Shown one piece after another: positions 818 through 55,856 of a stretch of DNA of 64,000 nt (position 1 is the stretch's first letter; every line of letters starts with the position of its first letter). A program made the translations under genes and the position numbers. A model generated the notes under the pieces. It saw nothing but the letters and a program-made list of their open reading frames with translations, was not told where the DNA came from and searched no databases. Location: positions 62,001-126,000 of IMG/VR virus record IMGVR_UViG_3300044701_003160, one strand, 5' to 3'.

Positions 818-2187
818 TTGAAAGCAGTACTATAGTCTGGTTGATTTGAAGAACTTCCATTTCCAGATCCATAAGAGAATACTGGATTTGGTCCAATTAA
901 CTTATCAAAAGAAACCTGAGGATCTCCACCCTGAGAGAATGCTCCCGCCAAATTAATTTCTTGTTGTTGAGGACATGCTGCATCATCATCACATTTGAAA
1001 AAGTTAAGAATACCATTTGCAAAATCTAATGCATTAAATATAGAATCTATGGCACCAGTTACAAGACCAACACCCTGAGAAAATAATGCAATTGCAGTTT
1101 GTACTGCATTTGTAATTTGATCTAAAATACCAAAGTTATTTAATAAGTCAGATACAAAACTTTCAACAAAACAAAATGCAGTATCAATAAGTTTATCAAG
1201 TAAACCTGATAATATATTTCCAATTAAACCTGGAAGTTGTCTTACTAATTTATTAAACAAACAAGAAAGAAGATTGGTTCCTTCATTTATTTTCTTCATA
1301 AATTTTGGCATCTCACTTGGAAATAGAAAAGGCAATACCTTTTTTGCAGAATCGGAAACTACATTATAAGCATAACCACGAATACTATCAAATAAACTTT
1401 TTACATATCCTGTAATATCGCCAGTTGCAATATCTAAAACTTTCTGAATAAATTTTTCTCTATCAGGATCTCCACCACCAAAAAGTTCTGCAATCGTATC
1501 ATAATCTTTAATATCATTCAGTAGATTTTGAATTGTTGTTTGAATTCCCTTGAAAGGACTATTATCAGTTTTACAGGGACTTGCGAGTGGTGTTGGTTTT
1601 TTCCTATCAAGATCTTGTTCTGTCCAAGCTTGAACTGCACTGTCACTTAAATGAATTTTATCACCAATTGATTGAATTACTTTCCAATATTCTTGAGTTC
1701 CTATTAAATTGGTTGGGACAAATGCACCTCTTTCTGGTGTTCCTTCTTTATAAGTTTGATTAAAGAGTTGACCACCACCTATTTCACCTTTTGGTTGTTC
1801 TTTTGGAACATCATTATTGGAGTTAATTAATACTCCATCAATATAAGGCTCTTGTCCTGCCATTCCATCTAAGAACCATCCAGTTACAATCGTACCAGAA
1901 GAAAGTGCAGGAGTGTCATGAAATCCACCAAGACCAGAACCTGCAGTAACTGGCATAACCACATTTGCCATAGGCAACTGTTCGTCAGGAAGATCCTGAG
2001 TATTTGCAGAATGCAATCCAAAATATCTTATGCGATATCGATATCCCCATCCTTTTTGTTGTTCTGCTTCACTAAAAAGTTCGTCCTCAATATTTTCCTG
2101 CCAAGATACATCAGAAACTACTCTACCAAACCATCTTGGTACAGAAGAAACTGTATTTAAATCAAAATTTCCAGAATATTCACTCAT
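814..2187 (-). CDS. Baseplate hub gp5 N-terminal (OB-fold) portion
   Basis: WFGRVV...RYRIRYFGLH...LPDEQLPMANVVMPVT...G.IVTGWFLDG...PYIDG matches the T4 gp5 N-terminal pattern; baseplate context. Confidence 0.75.
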   Translation of the reverse strand: MSEYSGNFDLNTVSSVPRWFGRVVSDVSWQENIEDELFSEAEQQKGWGYRYRIRYFGLHSANTQDLPDEQLPMANVVMPVTAGSGLGGFHDTPALSSGTIVTGWFLDGMAGQEPYIDGVLINSNNDVPKEQPKGEIGGGQLFNQTYKEGTPERGAFVPTNLIGTQEYWKVIQSIGDKIHLSDSAVQAWTEQDLDRKKPTPLASPCKTDNSPFKGIQTTIQNLLNDIKDYDTIAELFGGGDPDREKFIQKVLDIATGDITGYVKSLFDSIRGYAYNVVSDSAKKVLPFLFPSEMPKFMKKINEGTNLLSCLFNKLVRQLPGLIGNILSGLLDKLIDTAFCFVESFVSDLLNNFGILDQITNAVQTAIALFSQGVGLVTGAIDSIFNALDFANGILNFFKCDDDAACPQQQEINLAGAFSQGGDPQVSFDKLIGPNPVFSYGSGNGSSSNQPDYSTAFK

Positions 2188-10268: not shown

Positions 10269-11078
10269 TCAGTCTATTTCAACGAATCCATCAGACCCAA
10301 CTGGAAGGCCAGAACCTCCCTCCGGTACATTAAAAAATCCATCAGATCCAACTGAAAGTCCACCCCCTCCGCCGGGAATATTAACGAATCCATCAGCGCC
10401 AATAGGAGGAATACCAGTTGCTGTTGTTTGTCCTGGTTGCATAGGTTTTTCAACTGCAACGGAGTTTCTTACATAACGAATAAAGGAAAATGAAACAGTG
10501 CATTTTAATAATTGAGAGGACTCATAAGAAACTGGTATTGAATTGATACTTAAAGGATACGCACGAATGAATTTATATTCTAATGCTGAACCAACATAAT
10601 CTCTCTCAAACTTTGTTATGTATAATGCATCAGTCTGATAATCATCTGGAAAATTTACACGATAAAAATAGTTTCTATTTTCCAAATCCTCTGCATTATT
10701 TTCACCGACACAATAAGAAATCCACCTTTCAAAAAAGTTTATAATTCCATAGTTTTTATCTACATAAAAAGTAAAATCAATGCGGTCGTCATACTGCCTT
10801 CTATATGCGGGTCTTTCCGTGACTCCAGTGTGATCATCAGTAATCTCATTTGTCATCAAAGAAGCACCAGGAAGTGATGCTTCAGAACAAGACAATTCAA
10901 TTAGTTCTTGATTTTTTCTTGCATTATAATCAGATCCAGGAAATCTTCCTTCACCCTGCTTAAGAAATGCTGCAGTGGCCGCTGGGGGTTGAAATCTACA
11001 AACATAATGAGAAGTTAATGCCGGTCTTAATAACTTCTGTTTTATCTCAAAGTTTTTAACTACAGTTGGTCCTGCCAT
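10269..11078 (-). CDS. Tail tube initiator / tube-like protein (gp54-like)
   Basis: LSCSEASLPG...YRRQYDDRIDFTFYVD...AYPLSINSIPVSY...CTVSFSF tube-fold motifs; Gly-rich repeated C-tail. Confidence 0.7.
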   Translation of the reverse strand: MAGPTVVKNFEIKQKLLRPALTSHYVCRFQPPAATAAFLKQGEGRFPGSDYNARKNQELIELSCSEASLPGASLMTNEITDDHTGVTERPAYRRQYDDRIDFTFYVDKNYGIINFFERWISYCVGENNAEDLENRNYFYRVNFPDDYQTDALYITKFERDYVGSALEYKFIRAYPLSINSIPVSYESSQLLKCTVSFSFIRYVRNSVAVEKPMQPGQTTATGIPPIGADGFVNIPGGGGGLSVGSDGFFNVPEGGSGLPVGSDGFVEID

Positions 11079-26818: not shown

Positions 26819-27343
26819 TTAGTGCTTATGCTTTTGTAGGTATCTAACTGCGTTGCTTAATGTATCTAAGTTGTCTCCAACCAATCCTAGCATTCTGTTG
26901 CAGTTGCTACAAAGCAATCCACGAACCTTTCCTGTCTTATGGTCGTGGTCCACATAAAGGTTATTACTATCCTTTCTACCATTTGTATTTGGATTAAAAC
27001 AAATAACACAAACTTCATTTTGTTCTTGTAGAAGGTTTTTATATTGCTCTAATCCAAAATCTTCACCATAAGTATATTTCAACATATAGTCTTTCTTATC
27101 GTCATAAGAAGGTCTCTTATCTTTATAGTCTTTACTATAACACTCTTTACACCTCTTATGACCTTTATAATATTCTGAAATAAGTTTTTCTACACCACAC
27201 TTGTTGCAGACGATATGAGTTTTACTCGCCCAGTTTTCTGCATAAGTTTTTTCTTCACATCTTATACACCTTCTACGACCTTCTCTAAAATCAGAGACAG
27301 AAAGTTCTTTGTTGCAACTTCTACAAATCTTCGTGGTTCTCAT
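26819..27343 (-). CDS. Endonuclease VII-like free-standing homing endonuclease (F-CphI-like)
   Basis: CVIC...LYVDHDHKTGKVRGLLCSNCNRMLG; two N-terminal CxxC repeats; between psbA and psbD. Confidence 0.85.
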   Translation of the reverse strand: MRTTKICRSCNKELSVSDFREGRRRCIRCEEKTYAENWASKTHIVCNKCGVEKLISEYYKGHKRCKECYSKDYKDKRPSYDDKKDYMLKYTYGEDFGLEQYKNLLQEQNEVCVICFNPNTNGRKDSNNLYVDHDHKTGKVRGLLCSNCNRMLGLVGDNLDTLSNAVRYLQKHKH

Positions 27344-27386
27344 TATGGTATTTAAACTTTTAACTATTTATAAAATATTAAACTCC

Positions 27387-27424
27387 ATTATAACACAAAA
27401 AAAGAGACCCGTAAAGGGTCTCTA
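27387..27424 (-). terminator. psbA terminator overlapping a promoter
   Basis: GAGACCC-tttac-GGGTCTC-T7; TTTACG-N17-TATAAT. Confidence 0.75.
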
Positions 27425-27430
27425 ATTTTA

Positions 27431-28947
27431 TCAACCGATTGAAGGAGCAGTGAGAGCAACTGGTGTTGCTTCTGCTGCTGCAAGGTCAAGTGGGAAGTTG
27501 TGCTTACAGTTTGGACTATATCTTCACCATACTCTTTATGAGGTTAGGTGTCGGACGCTATTGGTGTATTACATCTCACGCTTGAGAAACCACCTAGTCT
27601 CTGAACCTTCCAATCAAGTTCGTGATTGGCTTGGCTGCTGATTGCCCGTTAGGGTTTCCAGCAATTCATCCGAAGTTTATCTTACCTTTTCAGATAAGAG
27701 CGCCCACAAATCGAGCGTTGCGTTCATGCATGACTTCCATTCCAAGTCCTGCACGATTTAGGACATCTGCCCAAGTGTTAATAACTTTACCTTGACTATC
27801 AACGATAGACTGGTTGAAGTTGAAACCGTTGCACTGAACCCATAAGTTTACCATTCTTATGGAGTGGACTATATCTTCATCCATTTAGGATGTTGGGCGC
27901 TATTGGTGTATTACATCTCACGCTTGAGAAACCACCTAGTCTCTGAACCTTTCCAAGAAGCGTCTTGGACTTGGCTGCTGATTACCCAATATGGAGGGCT
28001 TCCAGCAATTCACCCAATGTTTACCGTCAAATTGCTAGGACGGGACCCCGACGATTGAGGTTAAATGCCATCGTAGAAACACCAAGAGCAGTGAACCAGA
28101 TGCCTACAACAGGCCAGGCAGCCAGGAAGAAGTGCAGTGAACGGGAGTTATTAAAGGAAGCATATTGAAAAATAAGGCGTCCAAAATACCCGTGAGCAGC
28201 AACGATGTTGTAGGTCTCTTCTTCTTGACCGAACTTATATCCGTAGTTCTGTGACTCATTCTCAGTAGTTTCACGAACCAGTGAAGAAGTCACCAGTGAA
28301 CCGTGCATAGCACTGAAGAGTGAACCACCGAACACACCAGCAACTCCAAGCATGTGGAAGGGGTGCATCAGGATATTGTGTTCTGCTTGGAAGACAAGCA
28401 TATAGTTAAACGTACCAGAGATACCAAGAGGCATCGCATCAGAGAAAGAACCTTGACCGAAAGGATAAACCAGGAATACGGCAGAAGCAGCAGCAACAGG
28501 TGCGCTGTAAGCAACACAGATCCAAGGACGCATACCTAGACGGTAAGAGAGTTCCCATTCACGTCCCATATAAGCATAGATGCCGATGAGGAAGTGAAAT
28601 ACAACGAGTTGGAAAGGTCCACCGTTATAAAGCCATTCATCAAGAGAAGCAGCTTCCCAGATAGGATAGAAGTGAAGTCCGATAGCATTAGAAGAAGGAA
28701 CAACGGCACCAGAGATGATGTTGTTTCCGTACATTAGAGAACCAGCAACTGGTTCACGAATGCCGTCGATGTCCACTGGGGGAGCACCAACGAAAGCGAT
28801 AATGAAGCAAGTCGTAGCAGCAAGCAGGCAAGGAATCATCAGGACTCCGAACCAACCAACATACAGACGATTGTTAGTGGAAGTAACCCACTCACAGAAT
28901 TGGTTCCAGGTATTTGTGGAACGTTGTTGAGCAATTGTAGCAGTCAT
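27431..28947 (-). CDS. psbA: Photosystem II D1 protein, three exons (28058-28947, 27714-27831, 27431-27502)
   Basis: Joined exons give 1080 nt = 359 aa + stop, restoring ...[12 protein letters not shown]...[14 protein letters not shown]... Confidence 0.97.
27503..27713 (-). mobile_element. Group I intron 2 of psbA (211 nt, no ORF), after codon A336
   Basis: 5' exon ends in U, intron ends in G; core elements TCAGAGACTA and AAGATATAGTCC; guide UUUGUGGGCG pairs exon 2 end and exon 3 start (CACAA). Confidence 0.93.
27832..28057 (-). mobile_element. Group I intron 1 of psbA (226 nt, no ORF), within codon L297
   Basis: Exon ...AACCU / intron ...CAGUG / exon CAACGG restores frame; core AGAGACTA and AAGATATAGTCC; guide GGGGU pairs ACCU. 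Confidence 0.9.
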
Positions 28948-28949
28948 TT

Positions 28950-29070
28950 GTTTTAAAAGGGTAAGTATGATTCAGGGGGACTGAATGGTTACAAGTATTC
29001 CCACGACACCCTCCATCGTGGGTATGAGGGATGCTTTACTTCTCGTGATCCCGGTTGGAGAAGATTCCGT
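28950..29070 (-). ncRNA. Structured psbA 5' leader (PhotoRC-II-like RNA motif)
   Basis: Hairpins CTTCTC/GAGAAG, CCCACGA/TCGTGGG and ATTCAG/CTGAAT between promoter and psbA ATG; family name from recall. Confidence 0.6.
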
Positions 29071-29112
29071 AGGTAAGAAATTGTTACATTCCTTAACCCC
29101 GTGTATGTATAT

Positions 29113-50643: not shown

Positions 50644-50649
50644 GGGTCT

Positions 50650-50842
50650 TTTAGGCTCGCCACCAATTCTTTGACTGGAAATTGGAAACCAGGCGGGAGT
50701 AAGATCCCATCCGCACCACCAATCCTTGAGAGAGATTGGAAACTCATAATAGGGTCATATTGACTCCACCAGTACTTTTAGAGTCTCTCCGTGACTAAAG
50801 GGGTTCATCACCGACCAGGGCTAGTTTTAAGTCATACCGGGA
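50650..50842 (-). ncRNA. Structured ~190-nt RNA (manA/wcaG-type cyanophage motif candidate)
   Basis: No ORF; hairpins CCAATC/GATTGG, GCGG/CCGC, CCAATT/AATTGG; UGGUG and UGGCG motifs; lies between tRNA region and glycan genes. Confidence 0.6.
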
Positions 50843-51468: not shown

Positions 51469-51882
51469 TTATTCATTTAATTGTCGTCTTTGTTTATGAT
51501 ACCCAACTTTTTTATTTAAAGTTTTATAAGTATCTGTTAAAGTATGACAATTAGGACACAAAACTCTTAAATTTTCTTTGTATCCATTTTCTCTTGATCC
51601 ATCTATGTGATCTATTTCAAGATAGATAATACCGTTTGTTGGATTTGGTTTTCCCCATCCACATTCGGAACACTTATATCCTGCCTCTTCAAGCATAAAT
51701 CTTCTAACAAAATCACTTGGTCTTCCATCTCTAACTTTGCCAGTTATTTTTTTAGATAACCAATCAGATATATTTTGTTTATAATAATCTTCTTGTTGGC
51801 ATTTATTAGAGCAGTAAATACCTTTTCCTTGTGAAGGAGAATACTTAAAGTTTTTTTTGCAGTTTTTACAAGTTCCTATCAT
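51469..51882 (-). CDS. HNH endonuclease
   Basis: CxxC...YCSNKC; CSECG...EIDHIDG...N.KENLRVLCPNCH. Confidence 0.9.
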   Translation of the reverse strand: MIGTCKNCKKNFKYSPSQGKGIYCSNKCQQEDYYKQNISDWLSKKITGKVRDGRPSDFVRRFMLEEAGYKCSECGWGKPNPTNGIIYLEIDHIDGSRENGYKENLRVLCPNCHTLTDTYKTLNKKVGYHKQRRQLNE

Positions 51883-51936
51883 CGATGTTAGACCACTCTA
51901 CACTTTTATTTATACTCTAAGTGTAGTTTAGAGTAA

Positions 51937-52024
51937 TACGAGTGCCTGGATTCGAACCAGGTCAAAGCCGCTAATCTGGCGGAAAGAGTTTATAAGACTC
52001 CTCTGACTACCAAGTCTCACTCGC
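51937..52024 (-). tRNA. tRNA-Ile(TAT) with long variable arm
   Basis: GCGAGTG/CACTCGT; GGAGT-CTTATAA-ACTCT; variable hairpin CCGC/GCGG; 88 nt. Confidence 0.8.
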
Positions 52025-52063
52025 ATAAAACCAAATCTATAATAGCGGATCTGGAACGCTTCG

Positions 52064-52803: not shown

Positions 52804-52888
52804 CGGTGAGGAAAGGATTCGAACCTTCGGATGCTTTCACATCGACTGTTTTCAAGACAGTTGCCTTAAACCACTCGGCCACCTCACC
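52804..52888 (-). tRNA. tRNA-Ser(TGA)
   Basis: GGTGAGG/CCTCACC; ACTGT-CTTGAAA-ACAGT; long variable arm. Confidence 0.95.
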
Positions 52889-53243
52889 ATATTATTTCCA
52901 ATAAACCAGCGTGTATTTTACGATGACACGGAGAACAGAGCATATAACATTTATCTATTTCTGTTTGGATTGTCTCCCATTTGTATCCTTTTCCCGCTAA
53001 GTAAGAAACTTCCTTTTTCTTATTTTCTGCCTCAATATGATGAAAATCAAAACAACAGGGAGGATGGTAATCTCCACAAGCATCACAACAACCTTTTTCA
53101 AGTTTTAATTGATTTAGTTTTTCAACCATCAACTTTTTATTATTATATTCTCTTTGGTATTTAATTTTTTTAAATTCTCCAGATTGTTTTTGAGCCCAAA
53201 GACGTTGTGCTTCTTTTTGCTTTTCTTTATCTTTATAAGGCAT
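52884..53243 (-). CDS. HNH endonuclease
   Basis: CDACG..HPPCCFDFHH...EIDKCYMLCSPCHRKIH; stop overlaps tRNA-Ser 5' end. Confidence 0.85.
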   Translation of the reverse strand: MPYKDKEKQKEAQRLWAQKQSGEFKKIKYQREYNNKKLMVEKLNQLKLEKGCCDACGDYHPPCCFDFHHIEAENKKKEVSYLAGKGYKWETIQTEIDKCYMLCSPCHRKIHAGLLEIIW

Positions 53244-53551: not shown

Positions 53552-53986
53552 TCACTGTAAATGTGCTCTTAATTGCCAAACAAATTTTCCGTGAGATTCC
53601 ATCAAATCTTGAACTAGATTGGCAGTTGCATAAGATTTTTGAGTTTCAGACTCTTCCGAAATTTCACCCATTAACTCACAAAATTTAGTATTGTTATCCA
53701 AAAGTTCTTGAAGCATCTCTTTTGCTCCCGTAGAACTTGTTGCTTCTTTGATTTGAGTTACTTCAAGCATTCTTGAAAGAGAACTTAAAGGTTTTACATT
53801 TAAGTATCTCATATGTTCGGAGAGCCTGTCAATCTCTTCAAACATCGTTTCATATTGTCCACCAAACAGTTGATGAAGTTGAGTAAAGTCTTCACCTACA
53901 ACATTCCAGTGAAATGCCCAGGTTTTATGGAACAAAACAAAAAGTGATGACTGAGCATCACTGAGTAATTTATAAAGTTTTTCCAT
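53552..53986 (-). CDS. dps: Dps/ferritin-like DNA-protection protein
   Basis: KTWAFHWNVVG.DF.QLH.LF..QY...EIDRLSEH ferroxidase pattern. Confidence 0.9.
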   Translation of the reverse strand: MEKLYKLLSDAQSSLFVLFHKTWAFHWNVVGEDFTQLHQLFGGQYETMFEEIDRLSEHMRYLNVKPLSSLSRMLEVTQIKEATSSTGAKEMLQELLDNNTKFCELMGEISEESETQKSYATANLVQDLMESHGKFVWQLRAHLQ

Positions 53987-54014: not shown

Positions 54015-54087
54015 TGGGAGCAGAGGGATTCGAACCCCCGACATTCTGCGTGTAAAGCAGACGCTGCTACCGCTGAGCTATGCTCCC
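54015..54087 (-). tRNA. tRNA-Val(TAC)
   Basis: GGGAGCA/TGCTCCC; TCTGC-TTTACAC-GCAGA. Confidence 0.95.
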
Positions 54088-54090
54088 TTG

Positions 54091-54162
54091 TCCTCTGTCT
54101 GGGAATCGAACCCAGTATCCGTGTGTGTTGTCCACCCGTCCTTACCAATAGACTACCAGAGG
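54091..54162 (-). ncRNA. tRNA-like element with non-canonical anticodon arm
   Basis: CCTCTG/CAGAGG acceptor, GTCT..TGGTAA..GGAC D-arm, CTGGG-TTCGATT-CCCAG T-arm; anticodon arm GGTGG-ACAACAC-ACACG lacks U33 and pairs poorly. Confidence 0.7.
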
Positions 54163-54164
54163 TA

Positions 54165-54236
54165 CTCCACAACCTGGATTCGAACCAGGGACCAATCGAT
54201 TAACAGTCGATGGCTCTACCGCTGAGCTATTGTGGA
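54165..54236 (-). tRNA. tRNA-Asn(GTT)
   Basis: TCCACAA/TTGTGGA; ATCGA-CTGTTAA-TCGAT. Confidence 0.95.
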
Positions 54237-54244
54237 ATGTTCTA

Positions 54245-54840: not shown

Positions 54841-55392
54841 TTATTCGATGGTGTCAAGTCTTAATTTAGAGTGTATCTCTCTGTGACAATTAGAACAAAC
54901 ACATATACATTTGTCAAGTTCCTTTTTTTGGTCTTCCCATTTTCGTATTTTAATGTTACCAAAGTTTTTATCTTTTTGTGATGGGTCTATATGATGAAAC
55001 TCTAAAGCATCGATACACTTATCATATCCGCACCTCTCACATTTTCCACCTTTATAATCAACTGCTCTTTTTTTATTATTTTGCCACCTTTCTACAGAAT
55101 ATTTGTTGTGGCATTTTTTACAATTTGCTTGCCATATTTTTTTACTTTCACGCCAATATCCAGTTTTTTCTGTCAAAAGAACTTTACATTTAGAGCAATT
55201 TTGAATTGGTTTACCATCTACTTTTAAAATTGGATTTAAAATATATCCATCTTTAAATGTTTTATGTTTTGTTTTTAATTGATATTTGTCTAACCAATAC
55301 CTAACAGTGGTTTTTCCTTTACTTTCAAGTTTAGATATTTGTGAGGTTGACATTCCATCTTCAATATATTCTATTAATTTTTGTTTATCCAT
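54841..55392 (-). CDS. HNH endonuclease with N-terminal HTH
   Basis: YKGGKCERCGY.KC..ALEFHH.DP...ELDKC..VCSNCHREIH; contains TTGACA-N17-TAATAT promoter (54829-54857) for downstream tRNAs. Confidence 0.9.
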   Translation of the reverse strand: MDKQKLIEYIEDGMSTSQISKLESKGKTTVRYWLDKYQLKTKHKTFKDGYILNPILKVDGKPIQNCSKCKVLLTEKTGYWRESKKIWQANCKKCHNKYSVERWQNNKKRAVDYKGGKCERCGYDKCIDALEFHHIDPSQKDKNFGNIKIRKWEDQKKELDKCICVCSNCHREIHSKLRLDTIE

Positions 55393-55511: not shown

Positions 55512-55624
55512 ATAAGGAACCTCCCTGTTTGTGCATCGTTGAGAGGCATAGGAGGTGTGGGATTTATGAGAAGTTTGGACCTCCTCCACCCGTGAAACTA
55601 CTATAAGGCATCAGAGCACTAAAG

Positions 55625-55813
55625 TCAACCCTTTGCTTCCTTACGTGCTGCCTTTTCTTCGGTAATCTCGGTTCTACGTGCCTTGACTAGTTTGGCGACC
55701 TCTTGAAGTGCCTTACGGGCCCGAGTACCTGCAGCATTGTTACCAGCAATAAATTTTTCGTCTTCTACTTTCCACGCTTCAACAGCACTCAGTAGTTCTT
55801 GTGATACAGACAT
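55625..55813 (-). CDS. Hc1-family histone-like protein
   Basis: EKF..GN.AAGTRARKAL.E..KL.K..R resembles Hc1-like DNA-binding proteins. Confidence 0.7.
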   Translation of the reverse strand: MSVSQELLSAVEAWKVEDEKFIAGNNAAGTRARKALQEVAKLVKARRTEITEEKAARKEAKG

Positions 55814-55856
55814 AATAATCTCCAAAATAAAATAGGATATGTTTATATATGCAAAC

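What the first reader, a model, noticed from the sequence alone, without database searches (positions are those of the whole stretch)
54091..54162. tRNA-shaped RNA with intact D/T arms but a non-decoding anticodon arm
Seen: it lies 3 nt from tRNA-Val and 2 nt from tRNA-Asn; acceptor, D and T arms are good, but the anticodon arm is an AC-rich, poorly paired GGTGGACAACACACACG without U33. Inference: selective loss of only the decoding arm suggests a non-translational role, such as a decoy for host anticodon nucleases or uncharged-tRNA sensors, an aminoacyl donor, or a processing spacer.
Basis: partly seen in the sequence, partly recalled or inferred. Interest (0 to 1): 0.6.

Follow-up and report, generated by a model that had tools for sequence, protein, structure and literature searches.

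The report
Conserved non-decoding tRNA mimic of cyanophages
The 72-nt RNA between tRNA-Asn and tRNA-Val is not a decayed tRNA but a member of an undescribed, widely conserved cyanophage gene family that keeps a full tRNA body and puts a short stem with a fixed five-base GACAA loop where the anticodon loop should be, so it probably imitates a tRNA instead of decoding.

Summary
The element is real: window 54162->54091, minus strand, 72 nt. Its acceptor, D and T arms are intact and it has no U33. The description "poorly paired anticodon arm" holds only in the standard tRNA register.

Across 90 distinct homologues the arm forms pairs 27-40, 28-38, 29-37 and 30-36, with a bulged A39 and a pentaloop GA(C/U)AA. 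Those pairs are kept by compensatory changes (G-C, A-U, C-G). The standard register pairs in only 39.5% of cells.

I found the element in 180 loci:
- six Synechococcus myovirus isolates, where it is never annotated;
- IMG/VR contigs of T4-like cyanophages;
- an unrelated lineage of about 80-86 kb, where it stands alone, far from that genome's one or few ordinary tRNA genes.

A scan of 185,579 species genomes gave three hits, all on short or MAG contigs; I saw no chromosomal copy.

The acceptor and T stems covary freely and the discriminator base is unconstrained. The D arm, the pentaloop and the core bases are nearly fixed.

So this is a selected, non-decoding tRNA mimic. I infer that tRNA enzymes mature it and that it binds a tRNA-shape-reading partner, most likely from the host. 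That partner and the biological role are not shown. Decay and a pure processing-spacer role are refuted, and an aminoacyl-donor role is disfavoured.

The parts
54091..54162 (-). The whole tRNA-like RNA gene, 72 nt. RNA position p equals window coordinate 54163 minus p.
   Evidence: ARAGORN; Rfam tRNA 32.6 bits; family model R1 97.8 bits, E 1e-27. Conservation stops at both ends.
54156..54162 (-). Acceptor stem 5' strand (RNA 1-7). Positions 1-6 pair with 71-66. G7 faces A65 as a conserved mismatch, which becomes U7-A65 in some lineages.
   Evidence: 99.3% of cells paired and 5 of 6 pairs changed on both sides across 90 sequences. At least eight different helices are all kept paired.
54138..54153 (-). 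D arm (RNA 10-25): stem GUCU/GGAC and loop AUUGGUAA carrying the G18/G19 equivalents.
   Evidence: The stem never shows a compensatory change; the only variants are U13/C13 and one A24/G24. This also holds in the scan that was not anchored on the D arm. The loop G that pairs with the T-loop C changes together with it (G-C to A-U) in S-SZBM1.
54121..54137 (-). Replacement for the anticodon arm (RNA 26-42): pairs 27-40, 28-38, 29-37, 30-36, bulged A39 (54124), and an outer contact 26-41 or 26-42.
   Evidence: this register; standard register, 39.5% paired; ARAGORN register, 67.6%; RNAalifold.
54128..54132 (-). Pentaloop GACAA (RNA 31-35).
   Evidence: A34 and A35 are invariant and G31, A32, C33 are at least 90% conserved in 90 sequences. 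The main variant is C33 to U. The P22 boxB loop has the same five letters and folds like a GNRA tetraloop with the C flipped out (PMC12550061).
54116..54120 (-). Linker corresponding to the variable loop (RNA 43-47), with invariant G44 and A45.
   Evidence: The assignment to tRNA core triples is inference from tRNA structure knowledge.
54099..54115 (-). T arm (RNA 48-64) with loop UUCGAUU.
   Evidence: 99.8% of cells paired and 4 of 5 pairs changed on both sides.
54091..54098 (-). A65, the acceptor 3' strand (RNA 66-71) and the unconstrained discriminator position 72. No CCA is encoded.
   Evidence: Position 72 is A 58, T 34, C 7, G 3 among 102 distinct contexts. The following bases are not CCA.
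54164..54237 (-). tRNA-Asn(GUU), the upstream neighbour on the same strand.
54015..54087 (-). tRNA-Val(UAC), the downstream neighbour on the same strand, starting 3 nt after the element.
   Evidence: A downstream tRNA starts 3-4 nt after the element in 67 of 127 loci, but its identity varies.

Best explanation
The element is a gene for a stable, non-decoding tRNA mimic. It belongs to a conserved family carried by phages of picocyanobacteria.

Shown:
- The RNA-level fold is under selection. It is a cloverleaf with a normal acceptor stem, D arm, T arm and elbow contact.
- The anticodon arm is replaced by a 4-bp stem with a bulged A and a fixed GA(C/U)AA pentaloop.
- There is no conserved anticodon, no conserved discriminator and no encoded CCA.

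Inferred:
- The element is transcribed with its neighbours or alone. RNase P and the 3'-end and CCA enzymes cut it out, because it keeps every feature they read.
- The pentaloop folds like a GNRA tetraloop with the third base flipped out, as the identical loop does in P22 boxB. It therefore cannot present a codon-reading triplet.
- The RNA then acts as a tRNA look-alike that occupies a partner which reads tRNA shape.
- Specificity comes from the nearly invariant D arm, core and pentaloop side, not from the freely covarying acceptor and T stems.
- The partner is probably host-encoded. The gene moves as an RNA-only cassette and sits in two unrelated phage lineages.
- The most likely role is a decoy or competitive inhibitor of a host tRNA-directed enzyme in the phage-host conflict.
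For: Structure and selection:
- 90 distinct sequences pair in 97.6% of cells, against 77.9% in shuffles.
- 14 of 21 pairs show changes on both sides.
- Sliding the 3' partners drops pairing to 30-47%.
- The pentaloop register beats the standard register (39.5%) and the ARAGORN register (67.6%). RNAalifold agrees independently.
- The elbow pair changes G-C to A-U in S-SZBM1.

Not decoding:
- The ARAGORN isotype label is unstable.
- Pair 30-36 is Watson-Crick in 87 of 90 sequences, so the loop is closed at five bases.

Spread:
- 180 loci in all.
- Six isolate phages, none annotated.

Autonomy:
- In genomes of about 84-86 kb rated 100% complete (three checked), the only ordinary tRNA is far from the element, over 60 kb where both were placed.
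- 33 of 123 copies are solitary.
- The nearest isolate to that lineage is S-EIV1, at 31% primase identity.

RNA-only cassette:
- One S-RIM8 isolate carries the element in a clean 325-bp insert with no ORF over 56 aa.
- Fifteen other listed records of the S-RIM8 group lack the insert, with 99.8-100% identical flanks.

Not cellular:
- Only 3 hits in 185,579 species genomes, all on tiny or MAG contigs.

Loop fold:
- The GACAA loop of P22 boxB is GNRA-like with the C looped out (PMC12550061).
- The family's main loop variant is at that same third base.

Context:
- The same tRNA islands carry an orphan abiF RNA. That motif is the RNA antitoxin of AbiF (PMC12373285).
- No Abi_2 protein gene is present in this genome.
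- The S-PM2d tRNA operon that holds the element is transcribed during infection (PMC10976474).
Against: - No direct RNA evidence for the element itself. No RNA-seq run holds the window, so processing, CCA addition and abundance are inferred.
- No partner is identified. No gene co-occurs with the element across both lineages.
- The decoy role rests on anatomy and neighbourhood only.
- Known anticodon nucleases mostly read the anticodon loop, which this RNA lacks (my knowledge), so that class of target is not an obvious fit.
- The element is dispensable in culture, since most S-RIM8 isolates lack it. It is rare among sequenced isolates: 10 of 50,697 records.
- Two of my three collection scans were anchored on the D arm, so its apparent invariance is partly built in. 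Only the 23 distinct sequences from the third scan test it freely.
Confidence: 0.5

Rival explanations
1. It is a scaffold for a phage protein. The GA(C/U)AA hairpin is a boxB-like docking site for an arginine-rich phage peptide, and the tRNA body supplies processing and stability.
For: The loop has the same five letters as P22 boxB, which its N peptide reads specifically. The loop and the bulged A are conserved while the stem varies.
Against: No conserved protein gene accompanies the element in both lineages. The S-RIM8 cassette carries no ORF. T4-like phages are not known to use N-type antitermination (my knowledge). The loop-closing pair varies, unlike a fixed boxB.
Confidence: 0.13
2. It is a processing or punctuation element. 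The tRNA shape recruits RNase P and 3' nucleases to cut polycistronic transcripts, maturing neighbouring tRNAs, small RNAs or mRNA ends.
For: A downstream tRNA starts 3-4 nt after the element in 67 of 127 loci. In L069 the element lies at the end of a same-strand gene block. In three phages an abiF RNA sits a few nt (4-6) upstream of a tRNA, which suggests tRNA-directed release of small RNAs.
Against: Many copies are solitary. Any ordinary tRNA would do this job. It does not explain the fixed pentaloop, the bulged A or the invariant D-stem sequence.
Confidence: 0.12
3. It is an aminoacyl carrier used outside the ribosome. A synthetase that ignores the anticodon charges it, and it donates the amino acid to some transferase.
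For: The acceptor/T minihelix and elbow are intact. The D arm resembles those of phage tRNA-His, Glu and Gln (2-3 edits). The closest whole tRNA is tRNA-His at 51 of 72 identical bases.
Against: Synthetases that ignore the anticodon rely on the acceptor and discriminator (my knowledge). Here the acceptor helix is replaced wholesale between lineages and position 72 is free. There is no G-1 (position -1 is U or A in 92 of 102 contexts), no G3-U70 and no long extra arm. Host tRNA-Glu is not among the tRNAs the family model scores best.
Confidence: 0.08
4. It mimics the tRNA-Glu core. The Glu-type D helix (U11-A24, U13-G22 plus an A in the linker) lets the uncharged RNA bind glutamyl-tRNA reductase or GluRS and modulate tetrapyrrole synthesis during infection.
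For: The D stem GUCU/GGAC and A26 match phage tRNA-Glu. A tRNA-Glu is the only ordinary tRNA picked up by the family model in the group-2 loci, at 27 bits. Cyanophages are known to alter pigment metabolism (my knowledge).
Against: In a picocyanobacterial MAG the best-scoring real tRNAs are Lys, Val, Ile and Gln, not Glu. The tRNA-His D arm is at least as close. The linker is longer than in tRNA-Glu, not shorter. No biochemical data exist.
Confidence: 0.07
5. It is a decaying tRNA pseudogene, a DNA-level site such as a homing or recombination target, or an odd but real decoding tRNA.
For: It sits in a tRNA island rich in HNH endonuclease genes. It gives a weak Rfam tRNA score.
Against: Compensatory changes keep four helices paired across 90 variants and two phage lineages, which requires selection on an RNA fold. 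No conserved triplet occupies any anticodon register. The loop is closed at five bases.
Confidence: 0.03

Closest known systems
Ordinary phage-encoded tRNAs (Rfam RF00005)
   Same: Same cloverleaf body, the same U8, A14, GG and T-loop landmarks, the same genomic islands and strand, and the same tight spacing to neighbours.
   Different: It has a 5-nt closed loop on a 4-bp bulged stem where a tRNA has a 7-nt loop with U33 on a 5-bp stem. It has no conserved anticodon or discriminator. It scores 32.6 bits against 52.5-69.3 for its neighbours.
Phage T4 RNAC and RNAD, small stable RNAs from the T4 tRNA region
   Same: They are non-tRNA small RNAs encoded within the tRNA cluster of a T4-type phage, with unknown roles (PMC3014915).
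   Different: They are larger RNAs (from memory). The cyanophage element is a complete 72-nt cloverleaf and also occurs outside T4-like phages.
boxB hairpin of phage P22 (N-peptide site)
   Same: Identical pentaloop letters, GACAA. The family's variation falls at the base that is flipped out in the solved structure (PDB 1A4T as cited in PMC12550061).
   Different: boxB is a free hairpin in a nascent mRNA that works in antitermination. Here the loop caps one limb of a tRNA-shaped RNA, the closing pair varies, and no N-like protein is known.
Cellular and viral tRNA mimics (bacterial YrlA Y-RNA module, tmRNA tRNA-like domain, mascRNA, plant-virus 3' tRNA-like structures)
   Same: They keep the acceptor/T/elbow features that tRNA enzymes read, while the anticodon limb is lost or altered. 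They work by being mistaken for tRNA.
   Different: There is no attached Ro-binding stem, mRNA-like domain or viral genome. This is a free-standing, tRNA-sized gene with a specific conserved replacement arm. (Comparison from my knowledge, not tested here.)
Phage-borne RNA antitoxin look-alikes (abiF motif RNA; pseudo-ToxI type decoys)
   Same: They are small structured RNAs in phage genomes that plausibly neutralise a host protein. An orphan abiF RNA lies in the same island.
   Different: There is no sequence or structural relation, and the target of the tRNA mimic is unknown.

Membership tests
Canonical decoding tRNA | Acceptor, D and T stems, and the D-loop/T-loop elbow contact | tested here: met
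   99.3%, 100% and 99.8% of cells paired; the elbow pair covaries once.
Canonical decoding tRNA | 5-bp anticodon stem with a 7-nt loop, U33 and a purine at 37 | tested here: not met
   The standard register pairs in 39.5% of cells, and pair 31-39 never forms. Position 33 is C. The supported loop has 5 nt.
Canonical decoding tRNA | An anticodon and isotype conserved among orthologues | tested here: not met
   ARAGORN labels across 127 loci: Leu-caa 61, His-atg 26, none 23, '???' 11, Val 3, Cys 2, Leu-taa 1.
Canonical decoding tRNA | Score above the Rfam RF00005 gathering threshold | tested here: inconclusive
   32.6 bits against 29 with lax filters. Not reported at default filters for the window or for five homologous loci.
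tRNA pseudogene | Unconstrained decay, with substitutions that break pairs in all arms | tested here: not met
   97.6% of cells paired in 90 distinct variants; 341 cells carry double changes against 89 in shuffles.
GNRA-like pentaloop of boxB type | Loop sequence G-A-N-A-A closed by a Watson-Crick pair | tested here: met
   G31, A32, A34 and A35 are invariant or nearly so. Position 33 is C or U. Pair 30-36 forms in 87 of 90 sequences.
GNRA-like pentaloop of boxB type | Sheared G-A fold with the third base extruded, bound by an arginine-rich peptide | not testable with these tools
   Known for P22 boxB. Needs NMR, crystallography or chemical probing, and a partner search.
Aminoacylatable tRNA-like RNA | Conserved acceptor or discriminator identity set (G3-U70, G-1/C73, A73 and so on) | tested here: not met
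   Position 72 is free. Position -1 is U or A. Pair 3-69 is U-A or G-C. The acceptor helix differs at 5 of 6 pairs between lineages.
T4 RNAC/RNAD-type stable RNAs | A non-tRNA small RNA encoded in the tRNA cluster of a T4-like phage | tested here: met
   The location is met. Homology was not tested because no T4 sequence was fetched.

The most novel reading that the evidence does not exclude
This is an undescribed class of phage counter-measure RNA: a free-standing tRNA mimic whose anticodon loop is replaced by an uncleavable, GNRA-like pentaloop. It spreads horizontally as an RNA-only cassette between unrelated cyanophage lineages. It titrates a host enzyme that reads tRNA shape, such as a defence tRNase or acceptor-end-modifying toxin, or a metabolic tRNA user such as glutamyl-tRNA reductase.
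Probability: 0.3. Interest if true: 0.85.

Novelty: new variant of a known kind. Interest (0 to 1): 0.66.

Why it matters
Phage tRNA islands are usually read only as codon-usage aids. This element shows that they also carry at least one conserved RNA that cannot decode.

- It has been overlooked in every isolate genome that holds it. That includes S-PM2, a long-standing model phage, and S-CREM1, whose genome paper searched specifically for tRNAs and non-coding RNAs (PMC9964418).
- It gives a tractable handle on an old puzzle, the unexplained small RNAs of T4-type tRNA clusters.
- Cultured systems and natural plus/minus variants exist (S-RIM8).
- If it proves to be a decoy for a host tRNA-directed enzyme, it would add an RNA-only mechanism to the phage anti-defence repertoire, and it would identify its host target.

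Tried and rejected
- Folding the single sequence: the minimum-free-energy fold is not a cloverleaf (z -2.65), so it is uninformative alone. The alignment was needed.
- Standard and ARAGORN anticodon registers: rejected by pair counts.
- Recent descent from a known isotype: no close parent. The best is tRNA-His at 51/72, and the D arm is of His/Glu/Gln type.
- Whole-molecule tRNA-Glu mimicry: not supported by family-model scores in a picocyanobacterial MAG.
- Host chromosomal counterpart: not found. The three hits in 185,579 species genomes are 413-nt, 515-nt and MAG contigs and look like phage carry-over.
- Conserved protein partner within 2.5 kb: the only clusters shared by both lineages were spurious ORFs that overlap RNA genes. 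The real neighbours are lineage-specific.
- Window neighbours are HNH endonucleases, a Dps/ferritin-like protein and an Hc1-like protein. None is tRNA-related.
- Expression: no RNA run holds the window.
- Literature: six searches found no description of this element. The supplements of the IMG/VR structured-RNA survey were not available, so I could not check whether one of its tRNA-overlapping candidates is this family.
- The large protein searches, structure prediction and complex prediction were not used, because the feature is an RNA.

Full report
**What is there**

The window is part of a 219,018-bp virus record. Its psbA, wcaG and PhotoRC-II RNAs and its best DNA matches mark it as a T4-like cyanophage of Synechococcus-type hosts.

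Between 51.4 and 55.5 kb, ARAGORN finds eleven tRNA-like genes, all on the minus strand. The flagged one runs 54162->54091 and is 72 nt. It lies 1-2 nt after tRNA-Asn and 3 nt before tRNA-Val.

The Rfam tRNA model scores it at 32.6 bits, just above the gathering score of 29, while the nine neighbours it matched score 52.5-69.3. With default filters it is not reported at all. Folded alone, it does not give a cloverleaf.

**Homologues show conservation, not decay**

A 72-nt blastn search of 50,697 phage records found 10 records from six Synechococcus myoviruses: S-PM2, S-RIM32, one S-RIM8 isolate, S-CREM1, S-SZBM1 and DSL-LC03. The element is unannotated in every one.

Three exact-pattern scans of IMG/VR, using three different anchors, added many contigs:
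- the loop-to-T-arm anchor gave 33;
- the C13 variant of the D arm gave 37.

In all, 180 loci hold the element, with 90 distinct sequences aligned as A4.

Across these 90 sequences:
- The acceptor stem pairs in 99.3% of cells, and 5 of 6 pairs change on both sides. At least eight different helices occur.
- The T stem pairs in 99.8% of cells, and 4 of 5 pairs change on both sides.
- The D-loop G that pairs with the T-loop C changes together with it (G-C to A-U) in S-SZBM1.
- Overall 97.6% of cells pair, against 77.9% in column shuffles and 30-47% when the 3' partners are slid.

**The arm that replaces the anticodon arm**

- In the standard tRNA register (27-31 with 39-43) only 39.5% of cells pair, and pair 31-39 never forms.
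- ARAGORN's register reaches 67.6%.
- The register 27-40, 28-38, 29-37, 30-36 pairs in 89, 90, 90 and 87 of 90 sequences. All four pairs show G-C, C-G and A-U exchanges.
- Position 39 is a bulged A, conserved in at least 90% of sequences.
- Position 26 faces 41 (A-U in 52 sequences; the rest are mostly G opposite A). Alternatively it pairs with 42, which held in 58 of 61 sequences of the first alignment.
- RNAalifold, run without my structure, predicts the same hairpin with a 5-nt loop.

The loop is GACAA. A34 and A35 are invariant, G31, A32 and C33 are at least 90% conserved, and the main variant is C33 to U. The boxB hairpin of phage P22 has the same five letters. There the loop adopts a GNRA-tetraloop-like fold with the C flipped out (PMC12550061, citing PDB 1A4T). 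The base that varies here is that flipped-out one.

I infer, but cannot show, that the limb ends in a compact GNRA-like cap that cannot offer an anticodon.

**It does not decode and probably is not charged**

- ARAGORN's isotype call across 127 loci is Leu-caa 61, His-atg 26, none 23, '???' 11, Val 3, Cys 2, Leu-taa 1. No register carries a conserved triplet.
- The base after the acceptor stem is A 58, T 34, C 7, G 3 in 102 distinct contexts.
- The base before position 1 is U or A in 92 of 102 contexts.
- No CCA is encoded, and the flanks are not conserved.
- Synthetases that ignore the anticodon depend on the acceptor and discriminator (established knowledge). Here the acceptor helix is exchanged wholesale between lineages, so a shared identity set is unlikely.
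- No tRNA isotype is a close parent. The best whole-molecule match among 661 phage tRNAs is tRNA-His at 51 of 72 identical bases. The D arm is 2-3 edits from phage tRNA-His, Glu and Gln.
- In a picocyanobacterial MAG, the family model ranks Lys, Val, Ile and Gln above Glu.

**Where it lives**

In T4-like cyanophages the element sits in tRNA islands on the tRNA strand, but its neighbours change:
- upstream: Asn 49, Gly 30, Thr 19 and others;
- downstream: Val 48, Asn 24, Leu 18, Ala 13.

In S-RIM8, one isolate (KX349286) carries it inside a clean 325-bp insert between tRNA-Thr and tRNA-Ala. Fifteen other listed records of the S-RIM8 group have 99.8-100% identical flanks without the insert. The insert has no ORF over 56 aa. 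So the gene moves as an RNA-only cassette and is dispensable in culture.

A second set of carriers is a different kind of phage:
- Four of the five records checked are 79-86 kb and rated 100% complete.
- Three of them (84-86 kb) have only one ordinary tRNA, far from the element: about 63 kb in G004.
- The primase's nearest isolate relative is S-EIV1, at 31% identity.
- The neighbouring genes include a thymidylate synthase carrying an HNH insertion and an endolysin.

Overall, 33 of 123 copies with at least 1 kb on both sides have no other tRNA within 1 kb, and two loci carry two diverged copies.

A scan of one genome from each of 185,579 prokaryote species gave three hits. Two lie on contigs of 413 and 515 nt and one on a MAG contig. 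I read these as phage carry-over, so the gene is viral.

**What is constrained**

The acceptor and T stems are constrained only to pair. By contrast:
- The D stem never shows a compensatory change. G10-C25 and C12-G23 are invariant, U11-A24 holds in 89 of 90 sequences, and position 13 is U or C opposite G22.
- The D loop, G44, A45, the T loop, the pentaloop and mostly A39 are fixed.

One caveat applies. Two of my three scans were anchored on the D arm. The scan that was not anchored there (23 distinct family sequences) still shows only the U13/C13, A24/G24 and G7/U7 variants.

Sequence-level constraint therefore lies on the D-arm, core and lower-limb side. That is where I expect a specific partner to bind.

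**How it most likely works**

Shown: a selected RNA fold with an intact tRNA body, a rebuilt non-decoding limb, autonomy from neighbouring tRNAs, and horizontal spread.

Inferred:
1. tRNA-processing enzymes mature the RNA. Indirect support: the S-PM2d tRNA operon that contains it is transcribed during infection (PMC10976474).
2. It is not used on the ribosome.
3. It acts by occupying something that recognises tRNA shape.
4. That partner is probably host-encoded, because the cassette carries no protein gene and the two carrier lineages appear unrelated.

The same islands carry an orphan abiF RNA (window 55519-55555). That motif neutralises the AbiF toxin by direct binding (PMC12373285). No Abi_2 protein gene is present in this genome, and the abiF core motif lies on the same strand within about 4 kb in 34 of 127 loci. 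These islands therefore hold at least one other RNA that looks like a counter-defence decoy.

That is only association. I put about 0.5 on "processed non-decoding mimic acting on a partner", and about 0.3 on the narrower reading of a host-enzyme decoy.

**Rivals**

- A boxB-like dock for a phage peptide.
- A processing or punctuation element. The solitary copies and the sequence-specific loop and D arm argue against it.
- An aminoacyl carrier. The free discriminator and the swapped acceptor helix argue against it.
- A tRNA-Glu-core mimic acting on glutamyl-tRNA reductase. The D helix fits, but model scores do not support it.
- A pseudogene, a DNA-level site or an odd decoding tRNA. Covariation rejects these.

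**Comparison with what is known**

- It works like the known tRNA mimics, in that it keeps what tRNA enzymes read and has lost decoding.
- By position, it recalls the unexplained RNAC and RNAD of the T4 tRNA region (PMC3014915).
- It fails two defining tests of a decoding tRNA: the anticodon stem-loop geometry and a conserved anticodon. It also fails the test of a pseudogene.
- Rfam release 15 has no family for it beyond the weak tRNA hit.
- The S-CREM1 genome paper searched for tRNAs and Rfam RNAs and did not list it (PMC9964418).
- I found no description in six literature searches. I could not open the supplements of the IMG/VR structured-RNA survey, so prior listing as an anonymous candidate cannot be excluded.

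**Limits and compliance**

No RNA run holds the window. No alternative genetic code was invoked. The costly protein searches were not used.

Noticed in passing
window 55519-55555 (-); also L126 2635-2671 and S-CREM1 record 10531-10567: An orphan abiF RNA motif (Rfam RF03085, 44.9 bits against a gathering score of 37) sits 6 nt upstream of tRNA-Arg. The 219-kb genome has no Abi_2/AbiF protein gene. The motif core recurs on the same strand within about 4 kb of the tRNA mimic in 34 of 127 loci. In three phages it lies 4-6 nt before a tRNA. It looks like a phage-borne RNA antitoxin decoy released by tRNA processing.
   Followed up: partly
window 51936-52025 (-): ARAGORN's tRNA-Ile(UAU) is 90 nt long, with a long extra arm and a very short D loop. 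The Rfam tRNA model gave no hit there at E up to 1. A class-II-shaped tRNA with an AUA-reading anticodon is unusual.
   Followed up: no
window 26819-29076 (-): psbA appears to be split by two group I introns (27840-28067 and 27491-27723). An HNH endonuclease ORF lies downstream (26819-27343) and a PhotoRC-II RNA upstream (28987-29076).
   Followed up: partly
window 51469-51882, 52884-53243, 54841-55392 (all -): Three HNH homing-endonuclease genes are interleaved with the tRNA genes. This fits the shuffling of tRNA-sized modules seen between related phages.
   Followed up: partly
window 53552-53986 (-) and 55625-55825 (-): A Dps/ferritin-like gene (Pfam Ferritin, 76.9 bits) and a small histone-H1-like Hc1 gene (50.3 bits) lie inside the tRNA island.
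   Followed up: no
window 50649-50747 (-): A wcaG RNA motif (98.1 bits) lies at the edge of the tRNA island, as in S-CREM1.
   Followed up: no
L125 2380-2707 against L131 681-683: S-RIM8 isolates are polymorphic for a 325-bp RNA-only cassette holding the mimic. In KX349286 the locus tags skip _027 at that place, as if a predicted feature had been dropped at submission.
   Followed up: yes
L125 about 2655-2700; L002 about 1835-1880 (-); L126 about 2575-2600: A roughly 45-nt intergenic unit (a short GC hairpin followed by a GTTATATCC...TATATTACG stretch) recurs beside the mimic in three phages. It may be a terminator, promoter or processing signal of the tRNA islands.
   Followed up: no
L155 2167-2238 and 3718-3788 (-); L158 likewise: Two loci of the non-T4-like lineage carry two copies 1.5 kb apart. 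The second belongs to a 71-nt subfamily that lacks the bulged A and has a different linker (CAGACA). I saw that subfamily in about a dozen contigs.
   Followed up: partly
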